The position numbers and the translations under genes are program-made. A DNA stretch of 64,000 nt, from the IMG/VR virus record IMGVR_UViG_3300017763_000002, positions 1-64,000 of that record. The stretch is one strand, 5' to 3'. Shown here one piece after another: positions 4,170 through 59,905 of this stretch. The notes beneath the pieces are model-generated. The model searched no databases, was not told where the DNA came from, and saw only the letters and a list, made by a program, of their open reading frames with translations. Position 1 is the first letter of the stretch. Each line of letters begins with the position of its first letter.

Positions 4170-4379
4170 ATGAAAAAGACAAAATTTATCTTAACATTAT
4201 CTAACGATAGCATTCCCATCATAGCGGAGGTTTGTGCCTTGAGGGTATTAGAAAGTGATGAAAAAGTATTGGGAAGAGCTTGTGTTATGGAAAATGTAAA
4301 AAAGAAAAACTTTATCGACATAACAAGAAAAGCCAATTATAAAGAAGGAAAGTTATATGCCCAGGCAGACTATGTATAA
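4170..4379 (+). CDS. hypothetical protein, 69 aa
   Basis: ORF track; own promoter; last gene of the rightward early block. Confidence 0.7.
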   Translation: MKKTKFILTLSNDSIPIIAEVCALRVLESDEKVLGRACVMENVKKKNFIDITRKANYKEGKLYAQADYV

Positions 4380-4438: not shown

Positions 4439-4515
4439 TAAGTCGTTGAAGTTCAATGGCTTGCAGATTTTTTGCCCCGTCAGTTTTTTGCAAACTGTTG
4501 GCTATCAGCGTTTTA
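4439..4515. repeat. 77-bp double-dyad element, copy C
   Basis: TAAGTCGTTG-AAGTT-CAATGGCTTG, 27-bp core, CAAACTGTTG-GCTAT-CAGCGTTTTA; sits at the convergence of the two early blocks. Confidence 0.8.
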
Positions 4516-4517
4516 GG

Positions 4518-4598
4518 TTAACGCTTTAGAGTAGGATAGAATAATTCTTTGATGCCACCGATCACGCACGAAACGAGAAAAATTGTAATCAATTCCAT
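4518..4598 (-). CDS. 26-aa hydrophobic micropeptide (not in ORF track)
   Basis: MELITIFLVSCVIGGIKELFYPTLKR; the start overlaps the upstream stop (TAATG). Confidence 0.55.
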   Translation of the reverse strand: MELITIFLVSCVIGGIKELFYPTLKR

Positions 4599-4813
4599 TA
4601 CTTAGATAGTTCTAGCTTGCGGTTGTCAAGGATGAATCCGATTACTTTATTGACTCTTTCGATTGACTTGTCAATGGTTCTTTGGGCGTGTTCGCTCGCT
4701 TCCATCTCCTGAAGTAGATTACGCAAGAACTTGAGTTCTCCGTTTGTCGTTGCTAATTCCATCGCTGTTTTGTCAACAAGCTTTGGATCTTCTAGTTTTT
4801 CGATTAATTCCAT
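4598..4813 (-). CDS. helical hypothetical protein, 71 aa
   Basis: ORF track; leaderless promoter upstream. Confidence 0.75.
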   Translation of the reverse strand: MELIEKLEDPKLVDKTAMELATTNGELKFLRNLLQEMEASEHAQRTIDKSIERVNKVIGFILDNRKLELSK

Positions 4814-4819
4814 GATATT

Positions 4820-4847
4820 ATTATGAATGAATGAGTTTAAAAGTCAA
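4820..4847 (-). promoter_or_regulatory. sigma70-type early promoter (leaderless)
   Basis: TTGACT-16nt-CATAAT; ATG 4813 is 6 nt downstream. Confidence 0.8.
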
Positions 4848-4850
4848 GAC

Positions 4851-5312
4851 TTATTTAAGCTCCCAAAGTTCGGGATGAGAATCCCAATGGAAGACAAACC
4901 TGCCTTGATTTTGTTGTGCAAAGTCAATCTCGAATTGAGAAGGCTCAACACCAAAACGCAAACGAAAGTTTGCTTCCGAAGCTGAAATGCCAAGCTCTTT
5001 TTTAAGCTTAACAACTTCGCCCATGCGTGGACGAGCAAGCTTATTTTTGAAAGTCTTTTCAAGCTTTGGAGCTTTTGGGGCAAAGGTTGTGGAGTCAACT
5101 TGGAAACGCTCAGGAGCAGATTCATTCCAAAGAGTAGCAACTTCGGCAGGGTCTTTGCCGTTTGCAACAAGCTTGTGAGCCATTGACTCAAGACGCTTTT
5201 GGGAGTCAACCCCACGAGTCCAAACTGAGTGGTCGTCAGCGTAGTTGTAGAACCAGTCATGTCCTTGCAAGGCGTTTATAAAGTTGGAGAGAGTATTATC
5301 AATTTTAATCAT
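4851..5312 (-). CDS. hypothetical protein, 153 aa
   Basis: ORF track; LQGHDWFYNYADDHSVWTRG resembles a recurrent phage motif (HDW.Y.YSDD..VW..G). Confidence 0.75.
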   Translation of the reverse strand: MIKIDNTLSNFINALQGHDWFYNYADDHSVWTRGVDSQKRLESMAHKLVANGKDPAEVATLWNESAPERFQVDSTTFAPKAPKLEKTFKNKLARPRMGEVVKLKKELGISASEANFRLRFGVEPSQFEIDFAQQNQGRFVFHWDSHPELWELK

Positions 5313-5318
5313 ATCTAT

Positions 5319-5346
5319 ATATTAACAAGTTAAGGGTGAAAGTCAA
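5319..5346 (-). promoter_or_regulatory. sigma70-type early promoter (leaderless)
   Basis: TTGACT-16nt-TAATAT; ATG 5312 is 6 nt downstream. Confidence 0.8.
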
Positions 5347-5420
5347 GCTTTATTTTTTAAAACAAAGGCTAAAAGTATTTTTTCTCTTTCTGTGAGTTGT
5401 GTTTTATTAATCTTAATCAT
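5343..5420 (-). CDS. 25-aa micropeptide, LTEREKIL family copy 1 (not in ORF track)
   Basis: MIKINKTQLTEREKILLAFVLKNKA; own leaderless promoter; paralog at 7442-7507. Confidence 0.65.
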   Translation of the reverse strand: MIKINKTQLTEREKILLAFVLKNKA

Positions 5421-5426
5421 ACATAC

Positions 5427-5455
5427 AATGTAGCACATAAAACCTCAAAAGTCAA
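5427..5455 (-). promoter_or_regulatory. sigma70-type early promoter (leaderless)
   Basis: TTGACT-17nt-TACATT; ATG 5420 is 6 nt downstream. Confidence 0.75.
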
Positions 5456-5468
5456 GAAAAACTTTAAA

Positions 5469-5537
5469 CTATTTTATTGCACAATCCTTTTTTTGACGGG
5501 GTATTTTTTTTGCAAACCCTTGCCAGTCAATGATTTA
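5469..5537. repeat. half element (one dyad) plus 29-bp repeat
   Basis: CTATTTTATTGCACAATCCTTTTTTTGAC at 5469-5497 is identical to 6641-6669; dyad CAAACCCTTG-CCAGT-CAATGATTTA at 5513-5537. Confidence 0.75.
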
Positions 5538-5621
5538 CCAAGGTTTTTCTTCGGTCATTATATCTTTCCACATGATGTAGAATACGATAATCCAAGGAGA
5601 GAATAGGATAAGTTCGATCAT
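5535..5621 (-). CDS. 28-aa single-TM micropeptide (not in ORF track)
   Basis: MIELILFSPWIIVFYIMWKDIMTEEKPW; starts 4 nt after the upstream stop; its TAA is the outer half-site of the dyad. Confidence 0.6.
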   Translation of the reverse strand: MIELILFSPWIIVFYIMWKDIMTEEKPW

Positions 5622-5625
5622 GATG

Positions 5626-5841
5626 TTATTTTTTGCGTTGTTCGTGCAGTATCACTTGAAACTTCTTGCGAGCTTCTTGCACTGCATTGAGAGCGTCAAG
5701 AATAGCCATTCCTTGCGTCATTGTGCCTTGCCATTCGGGCGAGTTTGATACTTCAGCTAAGAAGTTGAGGTTGCCCTCGGCTTTAGATAGAGCTAGACCC
5801 ATGTCTAGTTCTGGGAAGTCCATTGCTTTCGATTCGTTCAT
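5626..5841 (-). CDS. helical hypothetical protein, 71 aa
   Basis: ORF track; leaderless promoter upstream. Confidence 0.75.
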   Translation of the reverse strand: MNESKAMDFPELDMGLALSKAEGNLNFLAEVSNSPEWQGTMTQGMAILDALNAVQEARKKFQVILHEQRKK

Positions 5842-5847
5842 ATTATG

Positions 5848-5876
5848 AATATAGTTTAAAAGGTTTTAAAAGTCAA
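5848..5876 (-). promoter_or_regulatory. sigma70-type early promoter (leaderless)
   Basis: TTGACT-17nt-TATATT; ATG 5841 is 6 nt downstream. Confidence 0.75.
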
Positions 5877-6154
5877 GCTTTTATTTCTGTTATTCTGTTG
5901 ATGTACCATTCGGCATTATCGCCTTCTTTACCTATAACGCCACGCTTGAATTGGACTTTGGTTTGTAGCTTGTTTACGAGAGCCTTTACCTTTCTTCTTA
6001 CTTCGTGCTTGTCTTCAGCTTGAATTTCGAAGATGTTGTTTGTCATGTGCGTATCAATGAATGAATTTGTATTAGTGTTCCACAAAGGAAGTTTTTCCTC
6101 TCGTTCTATAGAGGAGACATGAACATTTGCGATGAATTTTTTATTCTTTAACAT
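5873..6154 (-). CDS. hypothetical protein, 93 aa (start refined from 6268)
   Basis: MLKNKKFIANVHV...EIKA; starts 4 nt after the stop of 6159-6359. Confidence 0.7.
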   Translation of the reverse strand: MLKNKKFIANVHVSSIEREEKLPLWNTNTNSFIDTHMTNNIFEIQAEDKHEVRRKVKALVNKLQTKVQFKRGVIGKEGDNAEWYINRITEIKA

Positions 6155-6158
6155 TTTA

Positions 6159-6359
6159 TTATTGAAAGATGACATTGAAACGAAACTGATTGAGACCTTC
6201 GTCTCGCATGATTCTATTGAGATGAGATTCGCTTGAAGCGGTGCGAACTCGTGGGCGATCGTTGCCATCTGAGTCGATGCCTTGATCGAAGATTTTGACA
6301 GCCCAATGGGTTGACCACTTTTTTATTCTTACTTGTGTAACTTTGTTATTCTTAATCAT
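6159..6359 (-). CDS. hypothetical protein, 66 aa
   Basis: ORF track; leaderless promoter upstream. Confidence 0.7.
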   Translation of the reverse strand: MIKNNKVTQVRIKKWSTHWAVKIFDQGIDSDGNDRPRVRTASSESHLNRIMRDEGLNQFRFNVIFQ

Positions 6360-6365
6360 ATTTAC

Positions 6366-6394
6366 AATCTAATCTATTTTTTACTAAAAGTCAA
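6366..6394 (-). promoter_or_regulatory. sigma70-type early promoter (leaderless)
   Basis: TTGACT-17nt-TAGATT; ATG 6359 is 6 nt downstream. Confidence 0.8.
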
Positions 6395-6582
6395 GCTTTT
6401 TTTACATTATTTTTCATTGCAATTTTGTTTTGCAAATCCCATTCGGAAAGCCATGCCTTATTTTGTTGCAACAAGCTTTCGGCTTGCTCGCGAACTACGG
6501 CATTTTTCTCGCTGAGAATGATATCAACTAGGTCGTTGATGTCGGCTTTAACTTTTTTGATGAGTTGAATTCCTTTATCCAT
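6391..6582 (-). CDS. hypothetical protein, 63 aa
   Basis: ORF track; own promoter; ends KKA-TGA inside the next -35 box. Confidence 0.65.
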   Translation of the reverse strand: MDKGIQLIKKVKADINDLVDIILSEKNAVVREQAESLLQQNKAWLSEWDLQNKIAMKNNVKKA

Positions 6583-6588
6583 ATATAT

Positions 6589-6617
6589 AATCTAAGGGAA
6601 AAACCGGAGTAAGTCAA
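6589..6617 (-). promoter_or_regulatory. sigma70-type early promoter (leaderless)
   Basis: TTGACT-17nt-TAGATT; ATG 6582 is 6 nt downstream. Confidence 0.8.
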
Positions 6618-6640
6618 CTTTTATTTCACTTACCTTTTAG

Positions 6641-6709
6641 CTATTTTATTGCACAATCCTTTTTTTGACCCTGTGGATTTTTTGCAAATCCTTGATTATG
6701 TGTTACTTA
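6641..6709. repeat. half element (one dyad) plus 29-bp repeat
   Basis: 29-bp exact repeat of 5469-5497; dyad CAAATCCTTG-ATTAT-GTGTTACTTA at 6685-6709, whose TTA is the stop of 6707-7015. Confidence 0.75.
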
Positions 6710-7015
6710 GAACACAAGTGATTCTATGTTTTGATTAGGCACGGCAAACCAGTCGGATGGTTGAATTTTATGACCATTTAAGACAGGCTCAAAGTTGACC
6801 TGATGAACTCCGGCATTGACTATTCCGTTTACTCGCTCGCGAGTGGTTGGTGTGTTCCAGCCAGCAAGTGACCATATGACGAAACCGCTTGCGTCTCGTT
6901 TCACAATGGCGTTGCCATGTAGCCAAACGGTGTTTCCGTCTGTGCGTGTGTTGCCAACGGTCAAAGGTTGGCGGGATTCAAAGGCTGATTTGATTTGTTG
7001 TGTTACTTTTCTCAT
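6707..7015 (-). CDS. conserved phage hypothetical protein, 102 aa
   Basis: VWLHGNAIV...SLAGWNTPTTRERVNGI resembles a recurrent phage early-protein motif (LHGN.IA...GW.T.TT..RLN). Confidence 0.75.
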   Translation of the reverse strand: MRKVTQQIKSAFESRQPLTVGNTRTDGNTVWLHGNAIVKRDASGFVIWSLAGWNTPTTRERVNGIVNAGVHQVNFEPVLNGHKIQPSDWFAVPNQNIESLVF

Positions 7016-7033
7016 TTTATATTTATTGAAGGT

Positions 7034-7219
7034 TTACATGTCGAATTGACTATGGTAGCCATAGTCGATATCCTCTTGATCGGGGAATTCATTTAAGGCA
7101 AGCAAATCGTCAAGTTCGATTTGGGCGTTTATTACTTCCTGCTGAGCTTGAACATGTCCAAGTTCGGCAATCGGCGTTTGAGTCTTGATGATCTCTTTTA
7201 GTTCTGTTATTCTATCCAT
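7034..7219 (-). CDS. hypothetical protein, 61 aa (start refined from 7279)
   Basis: MDRITELKEIIKTQTPIAELGHVQAQQEV...; the start overlaps the upstream stop. Confidence 0.65.
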   Translation of the reverse strand: MDRITELKEIIKTQTPIAELGHVQAQQEVINAQIELDDLLALNEFPDQEDIDYGYHSQFDM

Positions 7220-7409
7220 GATTTGAGATGATTGGCAATTCTGCTTGGCGAAGGTCGCTGGTCTTGTAATCCCAAACAACTTCGTTTTGTTGTATGTTGC
7301 GAGCGATCTCCATTGCTTGAGCGTGGGTCTTTGCGTTGTCTACGATTTTACCAAAGAGTCTTACATCGAACCAATTGGTAAAGTTTGGGTTTTTATCTAC
7401 ATTAATCAT
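7212..7409 (-). CDS. hypothetical protein, 65 aa
   Basis: ORF track; NPNFTNWFDVRLFGKIVDNAKT; promoter upstream. Confidence 0.7.
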   Translation of the reverse strand: MINVDKNPNFTNWFDVRLFGKIVDNAKTHAQAMEIARNIQQNEVVWDYKTSDLRQAELPIISNHG

Positions 7410-7417
7410 ATTAGTAT

Positions 7418-7445
7418 ATTCTATATATTAGAGGGTGAAAGTCAA
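7418..7445 (-). promoter_or_regulatory. sigma70-type early promoter (near-leaderless)
   Basis: TTGACT-16nt-TAGAAT; ATG 7409 is 8 nt downstream; shares TTGACTTTCACCCT with the promoter at 5346. Confidence 0.8.
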
Positions 7446-7507
7446 GCCTTTTTATTAAGGATTTTAGTGATGATGAGGATTTTTTCGCGTTCTGTGAGAT
7501 TTGTCAT
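7442..7507 (-). CDS. 21-aa micropeptide, LTEREKIL family copy 2 (not in ORF track)
   Basis: MTNLTEREKILIITKILNKKA; paralog of 5343-5420. Confidence 0.6.
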   Translation of the reverse strand: MTNLTEREKILIITKILNKKA

Positions 7508-7545
7508 TTTTATCTTTGTTATATTGTTTATCTTATTATGTATAC

Positions 7546-7574
7546 AACATACCACACCAATCGACAAAAGTCAA
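7546..7574 (-). promoter_or_regulatory. sigma70-type early promoter
   Basis: A-tracts, then TTGACT-17nt-TATGTT; A-rich leader to ATG 7507. Confidence 0.7.
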
Positions 7575-7613
7575 GTATTATTTTACTTTTTTTTACTTTT
7601 TTTTATTATTACC

Positions 7614-7690
7614 TAAGTCTTTGTGTATCCGGCACTTGTGGAAATTCGACAGGGCAAAAATCTTGCAAACTCTTGCCTATTAACGACTTA
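7614..7690. repeat. 77-bp double-dyad element, copy D
   Basis: TAAGTCTTTG-TGTAT-CCGGCACTTG, 27-bp core, CAAACTCTTG-CCTAT-TAACGACTTA; the terminal TTA is the stop of 7688-7912. Confidence 0.75.
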
Positions 7691-7912
7691 GAAGTCGTCC
7701 ATTAGTAGCTCGTCTAGTGCATAGGTGTCAAGCTCAGGGTCTTGGTAGTCTGCACCGTCGGGCGTGCTAGTAGTGCCGCATTCTACTAGATAGTTAGCTA
7801 GATCTTTATAGTGCACGAAACGCCTAGCAAGCTTGTATAAGCCTTCGTCGTTGCCTAGCCATAGGGCTACATTCCAAGTAACCCAGTTAGACCAACCATT
7901 ATACCCTTCCAT
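7688..7912 (-). CDS. conserved phage protein, 74 aa (YNGW.N..TWNVALW family)
   Basis: GYNGWSNWVTWNVALWLGNDEGLY is a recurrent phage motif. Confidence 0.8.
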   Translation of the reverse strand: MEGYNGWSNWVTWNVALWLGNDEGLYKLARRFVHYKDLANYLVECGTTSTPDGADYQDPELDTYALDELLMDDF

Positions 7913-8073
7913 TACTTCGAGGCGTTAACGGGGAAAAGACCATAACGACGAGAGCCGTCATTGTGTGCTATGCGAGAGCGTAGAAGTCGCTCGGCATCAC
8001 GCTGACGCATTGCTATGGATTCGACAACCCAAACGGCACCCGCTTGGTTGAGTATAGATTTAAGTATGTACAT
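7912..8073 (-). CDS. 53-aa hypothetical protein (not in ORF track)
   Basis: MYILKSILNQAGAVWVVESIAMRQRDAERLLRSRIAHNDGSRRYGLFPVNASK; TAATG coupling to the downstream gene. Confidence 0.55.
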   Translation of the reverse strand: MYILKSILNQAGAVWVVESIAMRQRDAERLLRSRIAHNDGSRRYGLFPVNASK

Positions 8074-8087
8074 TATTAGCCTTTCGT

Positions 8088-8384
8088 TTAGGATTCAAAG
8101 ATGTCACGCATTGCACCGCTTACGCAATTCATATCTGTTAGATTTTCGTCACTATCAAAGTCATCGTCTTCTTCTGCTTCGACTGCATCGAGAGATTCAA
8201 ACTCTCCTTCGATATCACGCTCGGATGCGTGTTGTATGCCATGCTCAAGAGTAAACTCCTCGTTTGCGATTTCTTCCTCAAGGTCATTGAGTAAGTCAGC
8301 AAACTTGCCTGTGAGTTTGTTGTTGTTCTCATTGGCGAGTTCAACGGCTTTAGCGATTAGAGAGATATTATTATCATTGTTCAT
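8088..8384 (-). CDS. very acidic hypothetical protein, 98 aa (start refined from 8420)
   Basis: D/E-rich (EAEEDDDFDSDE); the start fits the promoter at 8393-8420. Confidence 0.7.
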   Translation of the reverse strand: MNNDNNISLIAKAVELANENNNKLTGKFADLLNDLEEEIANEEFTLEHGIQHASERDIEGEFESLDAVEAEEDDDFDSDENLTDMNCVSGAMRDIFES

Positions 8385-8392
8385 AGTTATGT

Positions 8393-8420
8393 ATATTATA
8401 TTATATTGAAGTAATTGCAA
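8393..8420 (-). promoter_or_regulatory. sigma70-type early promoter (near-leaderless)
   Basis: TTGCAA-16nt-TAATAT; ATG 8384 is 8 nt downstream. Confidence 0.65.
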
Positions 8421-8433
8421 GAAAAAAGTGCGA

Positions 8434-8547
8434 TTATGCGAAAGTTTTTTTATGCTTTGCCTTGCGTGGAAGCATCTTATTCTTTAGCTTGTGAGGTCTT
8501 GCCTTAGTGAAGACCATCGGTATTCTAACTTTAATTTTCTTATTCAT
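8434..8547 (-). CDS. 37-aa very basic peptide (not in ORF track)
   Basis: MNKKIKVRIPMVFTKARPHKLKNKMLPRKAKHKKTFA; own leaderless promoter. Confidence 0.6.
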   Translation of the reverse strand: MNKKIKVRIPMVFTKARPHKLKNKMLPRKAKHKKTFA

Positions 8548-8553
8548 AGATAC

Positions 8554-8582
8554 AATCTATCAAACAAATGCCTAAAAGTCAA
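8554..8582 (-). promoter_or_regulatory. sigma70-type early promoter (leaderless)
   Basis: TTGACT-17nt-TAGATT; ATG 8547 is 6 nt downstream. Confidence 0.8.
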
Positions 8583-8613
8583 CAAAAACATTCAACTGTT
8601 TTACTGCACTATA

Positions 8614-8638
8614 CCCCCACCCCCGGTGACCCTACCCC
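8614..8638 (-). other. putative G-quadruplex motif at the early/late boundary
   Basis: The minus strand reads GGGG-TA-GGG-TCACC-GGGGG-T-GGGGG, four G-runs with short loops in an AT-rich genome. Confidence 0.6.
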
Positions 8639-8754
8639 TTTTGTGAATTAGAATCTCTAAACAGATCAGAAAATCCGGCGGGGGGTGGTATTTTTCAATA
8701 TCGAAAACAAAATTAAAATTATACAAATTAGCTTGGCCCAAAAAAATCCACGGG

Positions 8755-8768: not shown

Positions 8769-9023
8769 ATGCCCGACGAACAAGACATGATATGGCTAAA
8801 AGGAATGCAATTAAAATTAAAAGGATGCGAGGCTAAAAACAGCGATATGAAATTTTTAATTAAATTAATGCAAGACGAATTAAACAAAACAAAACAATAC
8901 ATTCATTCAGAATGCCGCCGACCTGACTTTGAGTATTCAAAGCACGTTGACATGGCATTGTCGTGGACACCTAGAAAAAGAAAAAGAATAGTTACTCAAA
9001 TAAAAAATGAAATTAAAACGTAA
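8769..9023 (+). CDS. hypothetical protein, 84 aa (start refined from 8685)
   Basis: MPDEQDMIWLKG...; start placed by the GTGTA motif; overlaps the next gene. Confidence 0.55.
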   Translation: MPDEQDMIWLKGMQLKLKGCEAKNSDMKFLIKLMQDELNKTKQYIHSECRRPDFEYSKHVDMALSWTPRKRKRIVTQIKNEIKT

Positions 9024-9816
9024 AATATTGATTATGGGGTTGCCCGGTGCAGGTAAGACCTCTCTCGCTGAACTTTTAGTGCCTGCCTTAGGCGCTGTAT
9101 GGTTTAACGCTGACGCAATTCGTCAGGAAATACATAAAGATCTTGGATTTTCTGAGGAAGATAGAATAGAACACGCTCGTAGATTGGGAAAATTAAGTGA
9201 CTGGGCTGCCATGGGGGGTAACTTTGTGGTTTCAGATTTTTGCTGCCCAACAAAAGAAACTCGAGAAGTTTTTGAAGCTGATTTTACCATATGGGTGGAC
9301 AGGATTATGGAGGGCCGTTACGAAGATACAAACAAAATGTTTGAACGCCCTATGAATTACGACATTAGACTAACAGACGGCAGTCCAGAAGAATGGCTCG
9401 GAAAGGTTCTTAAAAAAATATACGAAACTGAAAAATGGGACAATCAAGCTCCGACAGCGCTTTTAATTGGAAGATACCAACCGTTTCACATTGGGCATAA
9501 AACGCTGGTTAATGAGGCTATTAAAAGAGTCGGTCAATGCTGTATTGCACTAAGAGATGTTGCAGGTACAGACGAAAGCAATCCTTATGATTTTGAAAAA
9601 GTTAAACTTGAAATCGAGAAAGCTTGCCTTGAGTTCGGAGATAAAATAAAAGTCGTTGAGCTTCCAAATATCACAGACGTATTTTATGGAAGGGGCGTAG
9701 GATATAATATCGAACAACTTGAACTTAGTAAAGAAATGCAGGATGTTTCAGCAACAAAGATTAGATCGGGACAAATTGGCCAAGACGGCAAACCTACTGG
9801 CAAGAGACCTGAGTAG
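9007..9816 (+). CDS. cysC: adenylylsulfate (APS) kinase fused to a HIGH-motif nucleotidyltransferase domain
   Basis: P-loop GLPGAGKT and DAIR...DLGFSEEDRIEHARR as in CysC; C-terminal IGRYQPFHIGH and VSATKIRS of the cytidylyltransferase/NMNAT-like fold. Confidence 0.85.
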   Translation: MKLKRKILIMGLPGAGKTSLAELLVPALGAVWFNADAIRQEIHKDLGFSEEDRIEHARRLGKLSDWAAMGGNFVVSDFCCPTKETREVFEADFTIWVDRIMEGRYEDTNKMFERPMNYDIRLTDGSPEEWLGKVLKKIYETEKWDNQAPTALLIGRYQPFHIGHKTLVNEAIKRVGQCCIALRDVAGTDESNPYDFEKVKLEIEKACLEFGDKIKVVELPNITDVFYGRGVGYNIEQLELSKEMQDVSATKIRSGQIGQDGKPTGKRPE

Positions 9817-9893
9817 TTTTGTCCCATTTTGGGCTGTAAGCCCTTTATTATTCATGTGTTTAATTGGCATAAAGATTGCAATACTATGTTTAT

Positions 9894-10265
9894 ATGAAAA
9901 ATTCACTAATAACTAACTTCTTGGGCGAGCCCAGCTTGCTCAGCGCGATGGATTCAATTATTGATTACAGTGTTGACTCCTATAAATATAGAACAACTCT
10001 AGAAAAAAAAGACAATGGGTATATCGTAACCGCTCAAGTTCCTGGAATGTCAAAAGAAGACATCTCTATTAAATTAGAAGATTCCGTGCTCAAAATAACT
10101 GGAGAAAAACAAGTTAATGAAAGCATGACTACATCTATTAATAAAGACTTCACTATAAGTAGTAGTATTAATACAAGCAAAATCGAAGCTAAGGTTGAAA
10201 ATGGTATACTTAACGTTTTTATTCCTCAAAAAGAAAATAAATCAAAAAAAATTCCAATTAATTGA
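9894..10265 (+). CDS. small heat shock protein (Hsp20/alpha-crystallin), start refined from 9876
   Basis: AQVPGMSKEDISIKLEDSVLKITGEK and IEAKVENGILNVFIP. Confidence 0.9.
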   Translation: MKNSLITNFLGEPSLLSAMDSIIDYSVDSYKYRTTLEKKDNGYIVTAQVPGMSKEDISIKLEDSVLKITGEKQVNESMTTSINKDFTISSSINTSKIEAKVENGILNVFIPQKENKSKKIPIN

Positions 10266-18189: not shown

Positions 18190-18726
18190 ATGAAAATTTT
18201 AGGCAAAAACGGTTATGTTAGAGATGTTACGGACGCTGATGTTTTAGAGCTTTCGGCTCATCCACGAGACGTAGACCAAAGGCATTCTCAGTATTTAGGC
18301 TGGGAAAATTACCACGAGCACATAATTAATACTTTTCATTCTTCTAAGCGGAGTTTAGCCTTTTGTTTCAGCGATGGAACTTTAGTCGGATGTACAGGAG
18401 TGCACGACTCCCCACACGCCCGAGTCGGAGGCGTCTGGGCATTAGGAACTAAAAACTCTTTAGATATTCTAGACTTCAAAGGCAGCTTAAAAAAAAGTTA
18501 TGGCAATTTAAAGTCTATTTTAGGTGTTTATGAATTTATGAAAATATCCAGGGAGCATTTCGATTGGCTTTTCGGAGAAGATTTTGATGTTTTGTTAAAC
18601 ATTGTTGAAAAAAATAACAAATTAGGACAGAGATGGTTGCGTTTTTTGGGAGCAGAAATCACGCCTAAAGACGACCGCTTTTGTCAAGTAACATTTTATA
18701 AAAATGGGCGGCGGAGTACATATTGA
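18190..18726 (+). CDS. GNAT-fold protein similar to T7 gp13/DUF2833
   Basis: LLNIVEKNNKLGQRWLRFLGAEI matches the N.V...N....RWL..LG.F pattern; GTGTA at 18164. Confidence 0.55.
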   Translation: MKILGKNGYVRDVTDADVLELSAHPRDVDQRHSQYLGWENYHEHIINTFHSSKRSLAFCFSDGTLVGCTGVHDSPHARVGGVWALGTKNSLDILDFKGSLKKSYGNLKSILGVYEFMKISREHFDWLFGEDFDVLLNIVEKNNKLGQRWLRFLGAEITPKDDRFCQVTFYKNGRRSTY

Positions 18727-21700
18727 TTTTAATCTAGATTTCTTATCTGCAGATCCTACATCCAACTCTGCCAAAAGAACATTATTCGGACACTCCAGGG
18801 CTGCCATGCCAGGAGCAATGCCGACATGGTACGGCCGTTTCAGGCAGTATGCGGTTTACGAAGTTGGGCATTTAGTTTTGCACGCGGATGACGCTGATGA
18901 TTTCTTGGCAAGAAATGAGAGGTCAGCGCCTTCTTTATCTAATTTATATGTATGCGTAAATACTAATAGAGCCGGAGATTTTCCGCCTCCTTCCTCAACC
19001 TCATGGAGATCATTGGCGGATTTGTCTAATGATTATGATACCGGAGCAAGATCAGTTCCTAGGGCTACTTTTTTAACTTCAGGAAGAATGTCTGATAATG
19101 AAATATGTTTAAATTTATTTGAATTTATTGATTTAAATTTTGTAATTTGTAATTCTACTTTCACCCCACTAAATAGCGGTTTAGACCCTATTGCTATTAA
19201 GCCTAGGGTTGGAGCCTCATTTGGAGGAGGGGTTACAAGGACTAGAAGAGAAGTGGATTTAAATTCATCGCAAGGCGGAAACTTAGAAAGGTTTACCGTG
19301 GATTATCCAGAGTATGCTATTTCGGGCACAGGGCAGATTCCCTTGCCTAGTAGAAAATTTGGTTTTGCGGCAACTTCTTTAAATGCACAAATGGGTTCAG
19401 AAATTGAAGCTCTTAATCCAACGAATGACCCGCTAGATCCAGATTTGACTGCAAATTCTTTTGACTCTTCTGTGGTTTATGAAGTTGGAAGCGTAGTGAA
19501 TTATTTTCCAATAGCTGATAATCAAAGCTTAGAGTCTGAAGTTTTTGATACGACTAACCACCCAAAGCTATCTGTGTGTATTAAAAATCTAGAATCTCCA
19601 GCAAGAGATCAAAACGGAACTTATGATACAAGCAAGCTCCCCTGGAATCAAAATTCGACTTACTGGAGGTCATATACATCTGCGGCGAACCGACCAAATT
19701 CATCATTAAGTTCTGTTTATGAATATTTAGTTAATAAAAAAAATAGATTTCCTGCATTTACAGTTAATCCTGACCCGGTAAAAAATCTATCTAACCAAAC
19801 AGTTATCAGGAATAAATCTAGAATTCGTATGAATGATTTTGGTGGCACCTCAAATATTTATGGGCACTTTTTTGTGCATTGGGCTACCGCATTACAACCT
19901 TATAGCAGGAGTAAATGCAGAACCTGGTACTCTGGGGCGTCATCGCAATCTGGCCCACATCAAGATGGGCAATATGATATTTTTATATATACTAAAAATT
20001 TGAAAAAAGACCACGGCGGCCAACCCAGGTTAGCTGTAACTTTCGGAAAAACTACTGCTATTAAATTTTTATCTGTTAGCGGAGTCTCTACATTTTCTAC
20101 AGGCACTATAAGTTCAAATACAATAAATAAATATTTAAAAGATGATAATTTTAACTCGTCAATGATTCAAGAGGTTAGTTCTGAGGCAGATATAATGCAT
20201 TATCAATATAGTAATCTCGTTCCCTCTTACTACATGGGAAGAGGTTACGTTCATGCAAGAAGAAGGGGCGGAGTTCATCCTGGCTCTAGCAAGGGCGATC
20301 GAAATTTAGGTAAATTTATATTGTTTATCGAAGATTTATTGTCTCGCCAAAGAATTGAAATGGTAACTCCTCAAATATTTTCTAATGGGAATCCCAGGCT
20401 TGGTCTTCATGGCCACTCAATTCCAACTCAAGACTGGGGAGAAACTGGGGCCACAAGAAATTATCAATATACAAAAGAAATTGTAGATGGCGGGGGTTTA
20501 ACAGATTTATTATCCACAAAAACAACTGCCACGACAGCGGCACAACCAATGCATTACTTAATAGTAGGCAACGCTTTAAGCGCAACAGACCAAGTAGCGA
20601 ATCAAGGAATAAGCTTTCAAAATCGTTTCGTAGATAGGGCTTTCAGGCCAATTATGCTGAGGACTGATGCGTTAAGCGAAGAAAGATTTTTTCATATACT
20701 TGGCTTGATGCAAACTGGATTCGTCGGGGTTGACGCCGAACTTTTTAAAAATATTACGGACCAAAATATCGACAACTTATCTGGTATAGAGAACAAAATA
20801 TGGATGGATCTTGGGGAGACGTTCCATGGCTCCCAAGGGAACCCTTTATTTAAATCAATCGCCTCTAAAATAGGCTCTTTTAAAGAAAACACACTTACGA
20901 ATCTAAACGATTTAGCTAGCTGGAGTTCATCTTCACAGTACTCTCCGCAGCAAATCACTAAAATTACCCATTCAGATTATTGGACTGCAGGAGGTGACCA
21001 GGGGAGTGCTAATTTTGTCGGACCTTGGTATTATGATGTGCAATATAATTCTGGGAGCGTTGTTTATTTGTGGCAAGACGGACAAAAAACTTATTATACC
21101 GCAGCAGCGAGTTCTAAGTCTGTTTCTCCAAAAGAATTTTTTACTTTTTACAGGGCGTCAGTGGCAAACTCAAATAAAACTCCTATCTACAATTCCAGTA
21201 TCTGGAAAAGAGTGTCAATACCTAAGGGTAATATCGGTTTCCTTAAAGGTTTTGTTTCGACTATAAACCCTTATACTTCATTGCAAGTTTTAGCTAATTC
21301 TAACCTATGGCCTCCAAGCGGAAGGCGCGCATCTAAAATTGGATTTGGCTGGAAGAGGACTTTATCTGAAGAGGGAATATTAAATCAAATCACAGAAAGC
21401 AATCAAGAGTCATATTTATCAAGCTGGACTGAAGGCGCAGAATACCAAGCGGGAGATATTATTACCGTGCAATCTGGTCCAATCGTCGCCCTTGCTCCAG
21501 ACGGAGAATACTATACTTACGAACAGTGGGTGTCTCGTTTTAATTTAAGCTCCCAAGAAGAAGAGGAAGTTTCTTTGCTGTTTTCAGAAGCAGAGGCAGT
21601 TAACCCGCTTTATGCTTTTAAGTGCTTAAAAAATACGTCTGAGGCGGATGTCAACGACCCTAAATCTTATGTAGGATTAATTCCTGGTTTTATTCCAAAT

Positions 21701-24700
21701 GAGACTTCGTCTGAAGTTTATTACTTACTGTCAAACCTAGACTCCGAGCAAGATTCAAACGATGTTATTTCAGAAAACATTGTATCTCAAACAATGTGGA
21801 AAGATATTTCAGCAGCTGAATGGAATAACGGTTCAATAACAACCAGTAAACTGGCGCACTATGGCCTGCTCCCTACGGGTCAATTTAATAAAAGAGACGT
21901 TTTCGGCGCAGGAACATATGCTTATGACCTTTCTTTTGAACCTTATTACAAAGTTGGTGATGCAGTTGTAATGAGGCAATCTGGCGTTGATGTATATAGG
22001 CTTAAAATCAAAGCATTTCACTTGATTGATTTTTCTTTAATTCCTGCCAGCTATACTGATGGAGGTAGTCTAGAATCTGCTAGCAGGATAAAACCAGATT
22101 ATTATTATTCTTCAAACATAAATTTAACAGGATCTTCGGTGCAAAACTATAGTTCTACCACCAGCTTCCACGGGCTAATTAGATCTCAGTGGTGGCAGCC
22201 TGTCGCGAAAAGAACAGGGGCTTTAGAAAGGGGATACCCCGATATATACGGAAACACAGGCTCTTACTTCGTGGTTCCAAAAAGCTTTGATTTCCTTCAT
22301 CTAGAAGATGGAATTGCCGAAGTGGCTCAACAAGCCACAGTCGACTCTACTATTAAAGTATACTTTGATGAGGTTAAAACTTTCGACTTGAGGGGTACGC
22401 AATACTACTGGACAAATGAAGTTAAAAATATTAGCTCAAATATGATTAATGCTTTGCCAAGTTATGGAAACGAAACGGAATTAGAGCCAAATTTAGTCGC
22501 AGAGCTTGAGCACCCTTATATTGATTTTGATGTTTTTGGGGCAAGTTGGGATGACGGCGGAACGACATCTCCGAATTTACTACAAACATCCACAACTGGG
22601 CATGAAGCTGTAGAGTATTTTAAAAGCTGGCTATATTCAAGTTTTGACGTTCAGCTAGCCAGAGACTTTGGAGAGCCTAAAGGTAGCAGCGTGAACCTTG
22701 ACGCTATATTGTCAAGTAAGTTTGAATTTGTAAAATACTACAGTTTTTATAATCCCACAGTTACTTTAAAGTATCAAATATGCGACGCATCTAATAATCC
22801 TATTGGTAGCGAAATTGATTATGTTGAAGGGAGTGAAATAGAAATCGAAAAGGGGCAGAGGATAAAATTAATCCCAAAATTAATTAAAGATGATAATAGT
22901 GAAATTAGTACTTTTTCATTGATGTGCAATTCTTTTGCAAAAAATAATACTATTGGACTTTTTCTAAGAACCCCTTTGGATAGCAATTATAAAGAAGTAG
23001 ATTTTTCTTATACTCATGTATCATCTTCTGTATCCGAGCCGCCTATTGATTCTGATGGAATAAGGGTTCCATATTATACGAACAAAGAAATTACTAGTGG
23101 GCAATTGGCTTTTCCCGCGCAAACCGGAGGCGCATATAGCGTTACTGCAGACCAAGCTAAAACCTATGCGAATGGAAATATTGTATCTTATGGGGCAAAA
23201 ACTTATGAATTTTATGTAGATGATGCTGATTGGCAATTTGACGCAGACATTGAAAATAATCCTGAAATAGCTCCAGGCAGATGGCACAGAAGATCCTGGA
23301 AAAATCCAGTGACATTGACCTACGGGGGAATTGCTCCTGAAAATACTCACTATAGAAGTTCTGGAGAATTTTTCCGCACGACAGAACAAGGCGGGGTGCG
23401 GGCTTCGGCGGAAACAATAACCCCCACATTTTCCAGTTCAGCTTTCACCCTAACTACCAACTTGCAAAATCTACTATTCGATTCTGCTATTGCATTTGGA
23501 CCTTATGGTCAAAATCTTTTACTATCTACCATAGATCAAGCTTATGAGGAAGTGGCCATAAAAGAAACTCTATTGAGTAGGTTTTATAAGTCTCAAACAT
23601 TGCACGATCAATACGGAGAAACTGGATCTGCAGAAGAAAAACTATTATCATCCGCACCAAAATGGAGGAACGTTTCAGGGCCAGAAGGCTCAATCACTGA
23701 GAACGAGATTCTTGGAATTGAGTGGTCTGCAAATAATGTTTACGCTCAGGGAGAAATTGTTGAATTTGGAAATAAATTATATATTTCTACCAAAATTAAT
23801 TCGTCTGTAGACCCTGCTTCTGAGCCGTCAGAGTGGAAAATTGTTCAACCTTGGCACCAAGACAACCATTACATTCCCGGGGATTTTGTTTATATATTTG
23901 AAGATGAGCTTGTTTTATCTTCTGATTCTAACGGAAACCCTCTTCCAACCTTAAGAGAAAACATTCAATTAAAAGGCCCTAGCTCAGGAGGAAATAATTC
24001 CTTTATTTATCCTTCTTGGTCAAAACACAAATACTATCATATAGGAGAAAAAGTTATTAAAAATTCAGCAATATACATATGTATCGCTGCAGGTATTGCG
24101 TCAACAGAATTAGAATTTAATCAAACTTTTCAATTAACTGCGGAAGCGGTTCCTGCACATCCTAATTATGGAGGTAAATATGCTTTCTTCGTTTGTGAAA
24201 AAAATATTTCTCCTGGGAGCGGAGGGCATGACCCGAGAAGATTGAACGTTCTAACTTCCATGCACGGAGATGATGACATTTTAATTAGGGCTAGCGATAA
24301 TTTATCTAAAGCTTTTAATCAAAATGACGATATATATTTAGATTTTACATATCAGAACGGGGATGCATTTAAGGTTAGCACAAAAAATATTAGCCTGTCT
24401 TTGTTCGGTTATAATTCTGCATCAAATATAGACGAAAGAGATTTTTTAACTCAAATTAATGCAAAACCAGAAATTGCAGAAGCGCATGCATCAACCTTAT
24501 CTGCGTGGTCTACTGGGTCTGAGGGGGAGGGTTTTATTTCAACTGGAACATTGAATATAAAAATAAAAGTTACTAATCCAAATCCATCAAGCGTAATTGA
24601 TAGAACTTTTACTCCCGCTACGCCACCTTCAGATTCTACCTGTCAAACATTTACTTCATATTCTAACTTGTTATGTAGTAATAAATTTTTCATTAATAAT

Positions 24701-27700
24701 GGAAAATTATATGCTTCTGGTTTAGATAGTGGTGAGTTAGGTTTTATTGGATTAATGGATAATTCAGAATTTCAAAATACGGTGTTAGGTAATAGTACCG
24801 AAGGTTCTCAGCACAGATCGTATAATAAATTTTGGGCGCTGGAAGGAATAGGAACTGATACTGAAAATCATAGGGTAAAGATTTTTGAAAATGGTAGTGG
24901 CGGCATTAGTAGTTCAGACCAAAATGAAACCATATCTAATGATCAATCAACTTTTGTAAATTCTGAAGGAGGAAACACAGTATTTATTTGCGGAGGAAAA
25001 CTTTATGGAATGGGTCACAATCAGGGTTATTCTTTAGGGTTGTGCGCTACTTCATCAAGCACATTTGGATTAGGTAACCGATCTCAAGGCTACAGAAAAG
25101 ACGGTAATGATGATCTTGATAAACAGAGAAAGAGCGAAGCTGTGCAAGACTTTTTTGAAGCATCCTTGCATTTCGATTCAGATTATTATATTAATCTACA
25201 AGTCAATCCTGGCAGCACAATCTATAGCCTTGGAGACAGTCAGCAACAATTTAGTACAGATATGAGCACAGATCTTGTTGCGTGGAACCATTTCACTAAA
25301 AAAGGTTTTTATCAATCAATTAATGACGAATGGTCTTTAATAGGATATACTAAAAAAGATGCGAACTTCTGGGGTAGTACGTCAAATCAAATATCCCAAC
25401 TTACAAGCGATTGGTATTTTGTTGAACCTTATAATTCTAGCTCTTGGATATCTCATCCAGGATCAATGGAAGCGACAGCTTTATTTACTCCTAATTATAT
25501 GCCTTCTGATTTTTGGCAGACAGGAGGAATACACGCATACAATTTAGACCAAAAGACACCTGCAGGTAGTTGGGGCGTAATGAATCTAGCAAACCTTGAC
25601 GCTTACTTTGAGTCGAGTATTTTTGAAAGGATGGATAAGCTTATTGAAGACGAAGATTATTTTAATGCCTGGAAGAACAATATGGCTCAATATAAATATG
25701 TTGAAAATTCAAGCGTTTATCATGGAACAGTTGATACATCTTCTGGATCTCAACCTAGGCTGGGCTGGAACGGTATACTCATAAATGAAAATTCTTTAAA
25801 ACGTTTTTATGACATGGGCGACTTCGTGACTTCATCAACATGGATGAGCCAAATGAGGATCGGAAGAACAGTTGCTATTTCTGGTGAAATTGATGGATCT
25901 GATTCGGGCTTTAAGCTGGCTACGTCTCATGAAAATGGAGTTGCTAGCCTAAATCCAGTATCAAGCCCAGATTATAGTTACTATAATAATTCCCAAACTT
26001 ATGGTTATGACGGGAGCATGGGAAAATGGGCTAAGGTATTCACTCATAATAAATCACTTTATATTAACGGCAAACCCTTTTGGGATCCAGTGCTGGGAGA
26101 ATCAGAGCACATCGTGATTGATACTATAACTGGAGAATATAATGCAGGAAATTCTGGTTCCGATAACCGAGCGACTCCCCTAGGTATTTATAAATTAAAT
26201 TCTGAAAAAAATATTTCGTTCGGGAATTACCCTAGAAATACCAGGCTAGAATCAGATTTACAAATAATTATTCCAAACAATTTAGGAATTAGTAATTTAC
26301 CTGGAGGAAAAAGAAATATTGATGGTCTTGGTAACGCAAGCAAGGAAATTATTCCTGCGAGAACATATGTTCCGTACGCGACTAAATTAACGGACGAAGA
26401 TGTAACTTGGGCTGCGACAAACAAGTATTCTACATTTTACATTAACCCCCAAGGGCAAGTAAAAGCTTTAGGTTCAGTCTGCGCTTGTCCTTTTTATAAA
26501 ATACAAGGATTAAGCGTTCCGCAATCTTTTGAGTTAACTCCTGGCGGAGACTTCGGCGGTTTGATGGGCGTAGAGGGTAACTATTCGTCTCCAGCTGTAT
26601 CTATAAATTCATTTGATGCTTTTGGCTCACTTACAATTACTGCAGATGACGCAAGCCCTGTGTTTAAAAATGATAATTGGGCTTTAATTCTTTCTGCGGC
26701 GGGAACTACCTCTAGTAGTAATTTACAAACTCATGCAGCTGATGTATTTAGTGGAGATGACATTTATTTCGGATCAGATTCTAGCGAATATATATTTAGA
26801 GATCAAATATCCCAGGAAATTATTATTGAATCTCAAATTACTGCGTCTTTATATGGTCAAAATTTGCTAAAAGTTATGTATGATGATAGCAGCTATAAAG
26901 TTGCAGCCAATAGTTGGATGATAAGATTTACAGAGAAAGGGGCGGGATTAAATGGCAGTGATATAGTTTCAGACTTGAGATGGTACGCAACTAGTTACAA
27001 TCATTCTATTTTAGTTAGAGCTGTTTATTTATTAGTATTAAGGAGAGAGGCTGATTCTCTTGGACTCAGTCATTTTTCTGGACAAAACCACTATGGAGTT
27101 AATATGACTCTTTATCAGCTGATTGGAGCATTAATGTTAAGCGAAGAATTTATAAGTAATGATGCTGCTAGTTTAACTAAACGATATGTAATAGATGCTA
27201 ACCCAGAATCTCCGCAGATTTCAAACGATCCCAGGGATTGTTTTCCGGCAATGAAAAAAATGATGAAGATATGGAATCATTATGGAAATACTTCGTTTCA
27301 ATATTGGGATGGAGATTCAAACATGAGCACTTCTCACATGCTGCGGATTTCTAGTGAATACATAGGAGCTATCGTAATTAATAACTGCGAACGAGAAGAA
27401 GTCAACGGTATATATCGCCCGTCAAAAGGATGGGATGATAATGATTTTAATAGTACTGCAGATAGATCTTGGTACGAGCACGCTCATAATCAAGGAGGTA
27501 GGGATGATGATAAAGGTATATACGTAAGCGATAAAAACACTCAATACGGAAAAATCTTAATTTATTGGGATGCTAATCTTGATATTTGGAGAATGCAGTA
27601 CTCTGATTTTTGGCTGCAGGATACTACAGGAGATGGACTCAGGGCTCAAAGATTAATTGGAATGCAAAAACATTATTACAACGCCAATGGAGATTTGGTT

Positions 27701-59889: not shown

Positions 59890-59905
59890 AACATATTATA
59901 TACAC

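What the first reader, a model, noticed from the sequence alone, without database searches (positions are those of the whole stretch)
5343..7507. Two paralogous LTEREKIL micropeptides hidden below the ORF cutoff
Seen in sequence: MIKINKTQLTEREKILLAFVLKNKA (5343-5420) and MTNLTEREKILIITKILNKKA (7442-7507). Over the shared octapeptide every nucleotide difference is synonymous (CTC ACA GAA AGA GAA AAA ATA CTT vs CTC ACA GAA CGC GAA AAA ATC CTC), which indicates selection on the peptide. Each has its own promoter, follows a dyad element, and ends in a promoter beginning TTGACTTTCACCCT. Inference: a short amphipathic helix that binds a host target. L(T/S)xRE motifs open many sigma region 4 and LuxR HTH helices, so mimicry of a transcription-factor helix is one testable idea.
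Basis: partly seen in the sequence, partly recalled or inferred. Interest (0 to 1): 0.7.

Follow-up and report, generated by a model that had tools for sequence, protein, structure and literature searches.

The report
Conserved early micropeptides of marine phages
The two tiny ORFs are real members of a previously undescribed family of 20-31-residue peptides with an almost invariant LT(E/Q/P)REKIL core, encoded behind strong early promoters in a group of ~200-kb uncultured marine phages; selection clearly acts on the peptide, but its target is still unknown.

Summary
Both ORFs exist as described, on the minus strand (5343-5420, 7442-7507). They are the only two LTEREKIL sites in all six frames of the 204,906-bp phage genome. 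Relatives found through a neighbouring gene or through the promoter alone, without using the motif, carry the same peptides. I collected 25 distinct short-ORF DNA versions. Synonymous sites in the octapeptide are near saturation (pS 0.59) and replacements almost absent (pN 0.05). All four complete relatives tested keep one or two copies.

An exhaustive profile search of 1.84 billion proteins returned ten hits. All are 25-44-aa members of this family, unnamed, with no larger domain.

ORF1 has the layout of the phage's other early genes: TTGACT-N17-TAnnTT-N6-ATG, so its mRNA is predicted to be leaderless. ORF2 is an old paralogue with the ATG moved and a ~32-nt A-rich leader.

The peptide models as one helix that starts after the LT. 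It is not amphipathic. The Lys-rich tail is largely read-through into the A-rich element of the next promoter.

The sigma region 4 / LuxR mimicry idea got no support from any profile test.

Best reading: a translated, trans-acting early peptide that docks on a conserved target. Function and expression are untested.

The parts
5343..5420 (-). Micropeptide gene mp1 (25 aa, MIKINKTQLTEREKILLAFVLKNKA), stop included. Its TGA lies inside the -35 of the next promoter.
   Evidence: Orthologue at 95% identity in L027/L032. Family alignments A1 and A3.
5427..5455 (-). Promoter of mp1: TTGACT-N17-TACATT. The ATG at 5420 starts 7 nt after the -10, so a leaderless mRNA is predicted.
   Evidence: The same geometry occurs at 24 of 74 promoter-like sites genome-wide, against a 4.5% background.
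5456..5485 (-). Conserved upstream element ATTGTGCAATAAAATAGTTTAAAGTTTTTC, abutting the -35.
   Evidence: Conserved in W, L001, L003, L004, L033, L035, L042 and others. Also found at 6640-6670.
5494..5525 (-). Weak dyad upstream of the mp1 promoter.
   Evidence: z 0.33, not distinctive.
5319..5346 (-). Next promoter (TTGACT-16-TAATAT). It drives the leaderless 153-aa gene 4851-5312 and overlaps the stop of mp1.
7442..7507 (-). Micropeptide gene mp2 (21 aa, MTNLTEREKILIITKILNKKA), stop included.
   Evidence: Orthologues in L001, L002, L036, L052 and L064.
7508..7539 (-). Predicted A-rich 5' leader of mp2, about 32 nt, without a Shine-Dalgarno sequence. It holds the former start (ATG now ATA) and a 17-nt insertion.
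   Evidence: Alignment A4. The leader is conserved in L001 and L064.
7546..7574 (-). Promoter of mp2: TTGACT-N17-TATGTT.
7653..7677 (-). Hairpin GGCAAGAGTTTGCAAGATTTTTGCC upstream of the mp2 promoter.
   Evidence: z -1.15.
7418..7445 (-). Next promoter (TTGACT-16-TAGAAT). It drives the 65-aa gene 7212-7409 and overlaps the stop of mp2.
5626..5841 (-). 71-aa early gene. Its homologue in L001 carries the LTEREKIL module fused to its N-terminus.
   Evidence: 67% identity over 48 aa.

Best explanation
mp1 and mp2 are two old paralogues of a phage gene family that encodes 20-31-residue peptides.

Shown:
- The core L-T-(E/Q/P)-R-E-K-I-L is held by purifying selection on the amino acids.
- The family is restricted to a group of uncultured marine phages of about 130-205 kb.
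- It has no detectable relative among longer proteins.

Inferred from sequence geometry:
- The genes sit first behind the strongest, most conserved sigma-70-like early promoter type of these phages. In most members, including mp1, the ATG is at the predicted transcription start, so the mRNA would be leaderless.
- mp2-type copies have lost that ATG and start five codons later behind a short A-rich leader.

Inferred mechanism: right after infection the peptide is made in quantity. It folds, probably on binding, into a single helix capped by the Thr. It uses the invariant charged turn plus the adjacent 5-7-residue hydrophobic block as a short docking motif on a highly conserved partner. That partner is most likely a host protein or RNA-protein machine, as with other early host-takeover or anti-defence peptides. 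The Lys-rich tail is mostly a by-product of reading into the A-rich upstream element of the next promoter. It adds positive charge but not specificity.
For: Reality and selection:
- Motif-independent ascertainment through the neighbour gene found 5 further copies in 4 loci, all exactly LTEREKIL with different codons.
- Ascertainment through the promoter alone found leaderless ORFs of 31 aa or less. Apart from two on unrelated contigs, all carry LTEREKIL.
- Across 25 distinct DNA versions, pS is 0.59 and pN 0.05 in the octapeptide, against 0.68 and 0.49 in the next six codons. Second codon positions vary in only one copy, the LTPREKIL variant.
- With that copy set aside, 11 variable sites avoid all 8 second positions with p=0.0017.
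- N-terminal length differences are always whole codons.
- All four relatives rated 95-100% complete keep 1-2 copies.
- A profile search over 46,256 stop-to-stop frames of the loci finds no degraded copies.

Gene-like context:
- mp1 has the same TTGACT-N17-TAnnTT-N6-ATG layout as 24 other sites in the genome.

A module that works as protein:
- Natural in-frame fusions place it at the N-terminus of an 80-aa protein (L001) and at the C-terminus of a 65-aa ORF (L038).

Structure:
- AlphaFold2 predicts a single helix starting after LT.
- There is no conserved RNA structure.

Orphan status.
Against: - There is no direct evidence of transcription start, translation or peptide. The four metatranscriptome runs laid on the region have only scattered contigs, and none covers either ORF.
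- No partner is identified. Co-folding with the 71-aa protein suggested by the fusion gave no answer.
- Part of the family set was found with a back-translated motif, so those members cannot count towards conservation. The unbiased subsets carry the argument.
- The host is unknown.
- Eight consecutive invariant residues could also reflect a constraint acting in the ribosome rather than on a partner.
Confidence: 0.6

Rival explanations
1. Cis-acting regulatory leader peptide. The nascent LTEREKIL chain acts inside the ribosome, alone or with the following run of AAA Lys codons, to stall or slide it. That would control read-through, mRNA stability or re-initiation at the gene that starts 33-36 nt downstream on the transcript from the upstream promoter.
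For: - The ORF is very short and lies between tandem promoters upstream of another gene in about 20 of 26 versions.
- The conserved core sits 6-7 residues before an AAA-rich Lys run. This resembles known arrest peptides, where the conserved residues lie in the exit tunnel (established knowledge for TnaC, SecM and ErmCL).
- Invariance on all helix faces fits a tunnel constraint.
Against: - The downstream gene differs between loci: 153-aa, 65-aa, 66-aa, g62-type or g71-type.
- Four versions have no downstream promoter.
- The distance from core to stop varies from 9 to 21 residues.
- In L001 the core is followed by 67 more codons of a normal protein.
- Most downstream genes have their own promoter and a leaderless start, so they need no coupling.
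Confidence: 0.15
2. One reading: the peptide mimics helix 1 of a LuxR/GerE helix-turn-helix or of sigma-70 region 4, and so interferes with a transcription factor, sigma or anti-sigma factor.
For: - L-T-x-R-E followed by hydrophobic residues resembles the start of those helices (recalled from memory).
- The one natural variant at position 3 is Pro, giving LTPRE. Gln also occurs there.
- The gene is early, when transcription take-over is expected.
Against: - No Pfam match at E<=10.
- GerE and Sigma70_r4 profiles scanned over the six-frame genome miss both ORFs at E<=1.
- The family profile finds no HTH or sigma chain in the PDB.
- It finds only micropeptides among 1.84 billion proteins.
- T-x-x-E is a generic helix cap, which is enough to explain the resemblance.
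- The power of these tests is low for a 14-residue overlap.
Confidence: 0.07
3. A membrane-active or toxic small peptide, comparable to type I toxins or membrane-targeting sequences. The hydrophobic block inserts into the inner leaflet and the Lys tail binds anionic lipids.
For: - A hydrophobic block is flanked by charge, with net charge +3 to +9.
- The module works at either end of a fusion protein, as targeting sequences do.
- Small one-pass membrane ORFs are neighbours: 5535-5621 and 4518-4598.
Against: - The hydrophobic block is only 5-7 residues, far too short to span a membrane.
- The helix is not amphipathic.
- Membrane-targeting sequences are not conserved residue by residue, whereas LTEREKIL is invariant and charged.
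Confidence: 0.1
4. Not a gene. The similarity would be a duplicated promoter-spacer or RNA element, and the ORFs would be accidental.
For: - The ORFs sit between promoters.
- Their 3' ends are promoter sequence.
- The region is A-rich and has few stops.
Against: - Variation is confined to silent positions, including two-step Leu (CTC/TTA/TTG) and Arg (AGA/CGC/CGA) changes.
- The other two frames are not conserved. For example, TTAACC puts a stop in frame 2.
- RNAalifold finds no structure: energy -0.04 and no compensatory pairs.
- In-frame fusions exist.
Confidence: 0.03

Closest known systems
T4 Stp, the 26-residue early polypeptide that inhibits type Ic restriction (EcoprrI) and thereby triggers PrrC (PMC3014915)
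   Same: Both are phage-encoded peptides of about 25 residues, expressed early, with no recognisable domain. In Stp the functionally important residues lie in the N-proximal part, and 8 C-terminal codons can be deleted with only a moderate loss of activity. Both act, or are proposed to act, by binding a host complex.
   Different: There is no sequence similarity. Stp's target and phenotype are known, and nothing is known here. Stp is not described as leaderless. The LTEREKIL family occurs in unrelated marine phages and is often present in two copies.
Small early host-takeover proteins such as lambda Kil (FtsZ), T7 Gp0.4 (FtsZ) and T7 Gp4.5 (Lon) (review PMC11323111)
   Same: They are small phage proteins with no enzymatic domain that bind one conserved host protein.
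   Different: From my own knowledge, those proteins are about two to four times longer than these peptides. None shares the motif. No target has been tested here.
Leaderless phage mRNAs, e.g. lambda cI transcribed from PRM (textbook knowledge)
   Same: The start codon sits at the transcription start, with no Shine-Dalgarno sequence.
   Different: In lambda this is one special transcript. Here it appears to be the rule for the first genes of early units, and apparently of later units too. It is predicted, not mapped.
Helix 1 of LuxR/GerE HTH domains and of sigma-70 region 4
   Same: A local L-T-x-R-E plus hydrophobic pattern at the start of a helix.
   Different: The profiles do not match. The peptide lacks the other helices of the domain. 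The resemblance is explained by a common helix-capping motif.
Ribosome arrest / leader peptides (TnaC, ErmCL, SecM)
   Same: Similar size, a conserved internal residue string, and a position upstream of another gene.
   Different: The spacing to the stop is variable, the downstream genes vary, and the motif survives in fusion proteins.

Membership tests
LuxR/GerE-type HTH (PF00196) | Match to the family profile over the helix-turn-helix domain | tested here: not met
   The six-frame genome scan with PF00196 gave no match at E<=1. hmmscan of both peptides at E<=10 found 0 families.
Sigma-70 region 4 (PF04545) | Match to the region 4 profile | tested here: not met
   The only weak genome hit is at 41667-41753, not at the ORFs. 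The PDB profile search returns no sigma chain.
Protein-coding gene under purifying selection | An excess of silent over replacement change, and an open frame kept across indels in diverged relatives | tested here: met
   pS 0.59 against pN 0.05 in the core. Length differences are whole codons. No degraded copies. In-frame fusions exist.
Leaderless gene | Start codon at the transcription start site | tested here: inconclusive
   The geometry is met for mp1 (ATG begins 7 nt after the -10) and is enriched genome-wide. No 5'-end data exist, and RNA contigs do not cover the ORFs. mp2 is predicted to have a ~32-nt leader.
Phage early small host-interacting peptide (Stp-like in kind, not homology) | Expressed early and binds a host target | not testable with these tools
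   Early timing is inferred only from sigma-70-like promoters and position in a block of small genes. No host, no expression data and no binding data are available.
Phage early small host-interacting peptide (Stp-like in kind, not homology) | Sequence homology to Stp or another described small phage protein | tested here: not met
   No tblastn match in 50,697 GenBank phage records at E<=10. The ten database relatives carry no functional name: one is labelled 'hypothetical protein' and the rest have no name. PHROGs was run only on the neighbouring genes, not on the peptides.
Amphipathic helix peptide | High helical hydrophobic moment | tested here: not met
   muH is 0.02-0.31, at or below that of shuffled sequences for all 27 members.
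Ribosome arrest peptide | Fixed spacing between the conserved residues and the stall or stop site | tested here: not met
   The distance from core to stop is 9-21 residues, and 67 in the L001 fusion. Spacing to the first Lys run is fairly constant, so a stall there is not excluded.
Type I toxin / transmembrane micropeptide | A hydrophobic stretch long enough to span a membrane (about 15 residues or more) | tested here: not met
   The hydrophobic block is 5-7 residues.

The most novel reading that the evidence does not exclude
The peptide is a dedicated take-over factor for translation. This phage appears to start nearly all of its transcription units at the ATG and hardly uses Shine-Dalgarno sequences. 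Its first, massively transcribed product could bind the ribosome or an initiation factor that discriminates against leaderless mRNAs, and so shift the host's translation capacity to phage messages. The invariance of eight residues would then reflect the conservation of the translation machinery.
Probability: 0.05. Interest if true: 0.9.

Novelty: new member of a known kind. Interest (0 to 1): 0.55.

Why it matters
Peptides of 20-30 residues fall below normal gene-calling cut-offs, and only ten relatives exist among 1.84 billion catalogued protein representatives. Yet this family is kept, often in two copies, in every complete genome of the group that was tested, and its core is more conserved than any neighbouring early protein.

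It is a clean, testable case of a phage micropeptide with a short invariant docking motif. The peptide can be made synthetically. If a partner is found, it would point to a host function that large marine phages must neutralise first.

The surrounding finding also matters. A whole phage genome seems organised around leaderless, Shine-Dalgarno-free starts, with two promoter classes placed a fixed distance from the ATG. That bears on gene prediction in uncultured phages and on how translation starts in their hosts.

Tried and rejected
- Near-identity and protein searches of GenBank phages found nothing for the region or for the peptide. Only distant terminase matches came up.
- The search for homologous proteins refuses queries under 40 aa.
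- Pfam on the peptides and on six neighbouring small proteins found no families at E<=10. PHROGs gave only 'unknown function' families for three neighbours.
- The ESM Atlas look-alike search had a best score of 0.62, which is uninformative.
- A full-text search for the motif found no paper.
- RNA evidence: four metatranscriptome runs hold pieces of the region, but none covers either ORF, and there are no 5' ends.
- 'Rosetta-stone' test: co-folding mp1 with the 71-aa protein to which the module is fused in L001 scored 0.01. The tool's verdict is 'no answer', so this counts neither way.
- The dyads as terminators or structured RNAs were rejected. They are not terminator-like and their z-scores are not distinctive.
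- A conserved RNA structure in the ORF was rejected.
- I looked for divergent family members, including the 36-39-aa K-rich peptides with a 'QFTKRAKLL'-like string seen in L003, L033 and L035. The family profile does not detect them.
The DUF1501 gene is only about 50% identical to Verrucomicrobiota MAG genes, which is a weak hint. The Shine-Dalgarno-poor style fits Bacteroidota, some Verrucomicrobiota or Prochlorococcus (PMC10783764).
Full report
**1. What is in the sequence**

The window is the first 64 kb of a single 204,906-bp contig (GC 35.8%) that IMG/VR holds as a complete linear virus record. It encodes a terminase, a PolIII alpha subunit and a 5,895-aa ORF. It has no close relative among GenBank phages.

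They share LTEREKIL. The four base differences in those 24 bases are all silent, which happens by chance with probability 0.0018. No other L[TS]ERE site exists in any frame of the genome.

**2. The context is a block of leaderless early minigenes**

Between about 4.5 and 8.6 kb the minus strand carries a dozen ORFs of 21-153 codons. Almost every one has its own CTTGACTTT-N17-TAnnTT promoter.

The start codon begins 6-7 nt after the -10 hexamer, which is where transcription should start. Genome-wide, 24 of 74 TTGACN-N16-18-TAnnnT sites have an ATG 5-7 nt after the -10. The background for any TAnnnT is 4.5%.

Shine-Dalgarno-like 4-mers precede only 25 of 136 long ORFs, against an 11% background. 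A second motif, GTGTA followed by an ATG exactly 9 nt later, precedes many other genes.

mp1 has exactly the early layout: TTGACT-17-TACATT-GTATGT-ATG. The longer ORFs that a mechanical ORF finder reports (31 aa from ATG 5438, 41 aa from TTG 7567) start inside the promoter spacers.

**3. Relatives**

*Found through a neighbour.* Searching IMG/VR with the 153-aa gene downstream of mp1 gave loci at 36-89% identity. The four closest (61-89%) carry five LTEREKIL ORFs with different codons.

*Found through the promoter.* Searching with the promoter string alone gave 39 promoters with an ATG within a few bases of the expected position, 34-41 nt after the start of TTGACT. Apart from two on unrelated contigs, every ORF of 31 aa or less behind them is an LTEREKIL peptide.

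*Found through the motif.* A back-translated motif scan added more members. These are biased for the motif and I use them only for flanks and context.

*Tally.* There are 24 distinct exact-motif peptides, including the two fusions described in section 6, from 26 DNA versions. One further short-ORF variant, LTPREKIL, also exists.

*Exhaustive search.* A profile search of 1.84 billion representative proteins found ten hits at E<=1e-3. All are 25-44 aa, all belong to this family, two have LTQREKIL, and none has a functional name.

*Retention and limits.* All four relatives rated 95-100% complete have one or two copies. A profile scan of every stop-to-stop frame in 1.2 Mb of loci finds no degraded or divergent copies.

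**4. Selection**

In 25 distinct short-ORF DNA versions the octapeptide has pS 0.59 and pN 0.05. The pN value comes from averaging over pathways for two-step Leu and Arg changes, plus one Glu-to-Pro change. The next six codons have pS 0.68 and pN 0.49.

The codons used are:
- Leu: TTA, TTG, CTA, CTC
- Thr: all four
- Arg: AGA, CGC, CGA
- Ile: all three
- final Leu: five codons

Only the LTPREKIL copy varies at a second codon position. Length differences before the core are whole codons. There is no conserved RNA structure. The peptide, not the nucleic acid, is what is conserved.

**5. Two old subfamilies**

Alignment A4 shows that mp2-type genes are mp1-type genes with three changes:
- the leaderless ATG became ATA;
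- the sixth codon became ATG, in the same frame;
- 17 nt were inserted after the -10.

The result is an A-rich leader of about 32 nt. That leader is conserved in L001 and L064. It resembles the A-rich, Shine-Dalgarno-free regions in front of internal genes of this genome.

The window and L001 each carry an mp2-type copy plus a second LTEREKIL copy, and L033 carries three copies, one with an mp2-like leader. The duplication therefore predates their divergence.

**6. Anatomy of the peptide**

The layout is M, then 1-8 variable residues, then LT(E/Q/P)REKIL, then a 5-7-residue mostly hydrophobic block, then Lys-rich residues.

AlphaFold2 with the family alignment gives one helix that starts right after the LT (mean pLDDT 83; 93 over residues 11-20). 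This fits a T-x-x-E capping box.

The helix is not amphipathic. Net charge is +3 to +9.

The tail aligns at DNA level with the A-rich element upstream of the next -35. The stop is either an early TAA or the TGA inside TTGACT. Tail length is therefore largely incidental. Other genes that abut such promoters also end in K-A-stop.

Two natural in-frame fusions show the core working as part of larger proteins:
- at the N-terminus of an 80-aa homologue of the window's 71-aa protein;
- at the C-terminus of a 65-aa ORF.

**7. What it is not**

There is no Pfam match. The GerE and Sigma70_r4 profiles do not detect it. A PDB profile search gives one chance-level hit. There are no GenBank phage matches, no paper with the motif, and the Atlas look-alikes are uninformative.

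**8. Mechanism**

The evidence supports a translated peptide whose invariant core is a docking motif. Several points favour action in trans on a conserved partner over cis regulation:
- the position directly behind the most conserved early promoter type;
- retention in all complete relatives;
- survival of the core in fusions;
- variable downstream genes.

The arrest-peptide rival keeps some weight, because the core lies a fairly constant 6-7 residues before a run of AAA Lys codons.

Nothing here identifies the partner. Co-folding with the fusion-suggested 71-aa protein gave no answer. RNA data do not cover the ORFs.

The host is unknown. Two weak hints are a DUF1501 gene about 50% identical to Verrucomicrobiota genes and the Shine-Dalgarno-poor style (PMC10783764).

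**9. Comparison and novelty**

In kind, this resembles T4 Stp: 26 residues, with function resting mainly on the N-proximal part (PMC3014915). It also resembles other small early phage proteins (PMC11323111). It is not homologous to any of them. I rate it a new member of a known kind, namely phage early micropeptides.

The genome-wide leaderless organisation is a separate and possibly more unusual observation. It still needs mapping of 5' ends.

Noticed in passing
whole genome; e.g. window 2969+, 3409+, 4170+, 5312-, 5841-, 6359-, 6582-, 7409-, 8547-: Early promoters of the form TTGACT-N17-TAnnTT place the ATG 6-7 nt after the -10. This holds at 24 of 74 sites, against a 4.5% background, so first genes of early units are predicted to be leaderless. 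Shine-Dalgarno-like motifs are close to background level (25 of 136 ORFs against 11%).
   Followed up: partly
window 13394-, 13440+, 38107+, 40147+; genome 71966-, 74601-, 81089+, 159134- and others: A second motif class: GTGTA followed by an ATG exactly 9 nt later, at 14 of 76 GTGTA sites. It sits in front of many larger genes. It may be a middle or late promoter that also gives leaderless or near-leaderless starts.
   Followed up: partly
window 8434-8547 (-): A 37-aa Lys/Arg-rich ORF (MNKKIKVRIPMVFTKARPHKLKNKMLPRKAKHKKTFA) with the leaderless promoter layout. It is conserved at 50-88% identity in more than 15 related loci, so it is a second micropeptide family below normal ORF cut-offs.
   Followed up: partly
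window 5535-5621 (-) and 4518-4598 (-): Two ORFs of 28 and 26 aa, each with one hydrophobic stretch (MIELILFSPWIIVFYIMW..., MELITIFLVSCVIGGI...). The first has homologues at 42-68% identity in about ten related loci.
   Followed up: partly
L001:4856-5095 (+) and L038:2879-3073 (-): Natural fusions of the LTEREKIL module. One is at the N-terminus of a homologue of the window's 71-aa protein (5626-5841). The other is at the C-terminus of a 65-aa ORF.
   Followed up: yes
L003:4829.., L033:6490.., L035 (minus strand, about 7072): Leaderless 36-39-aa Lys-rich ORFs (e.g. MKLRKNKLTKVAKLMKAKGKKNILLTLSKIIEKKVK) that faintly resemble the LTEREKIL peptides. The family profile does not detect them.
   Followed up: partly
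window 5456-5485, about 6640-6670 and about 8590-8615 (-): A conserved element ATTGTGCAATAAAATAGTT(T/G)AAAGTTTTT directly upstream of some -35 hexamers. It is shared with many related phages. It could be an UP element or a regulator site.
   Followed up: partly
window 4500-8700 and loci L001-L065: The early region is a mosaic of the same dozen small gene families, in shuffled order and copy number between related phages.
   Followed up: partly
window 18704-36391 (+): A single ORF of 5,895 codons.
   Followed up: no
window 58621-61948 (-): A DUF1549/DUF1553 gene and a DUF1501 gene lie side by side in a phage. The DUF1501 gene is 44-54% identical to genes of Verrucomicrobiota and Planctomycetota MAGs, which is a possible host hint.
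   Followed up: partly
window 9007-9816 (+) and 9876-10265 (+): An APS-kinase-like P-loop domain fused to a cytidylyltransferase-like domain, with an Hsp20 gene next to it.
   Followed up: no
L001 about 4330-4376, L004, L030, L064 (downstream of the micropeptide): A conserved ~40-nt leader containing AAGAAAACCTAAC precedes the MTKSEML... gene. It lies behind a promoter where the usual ATG position reads ATA.
   Followed up: no
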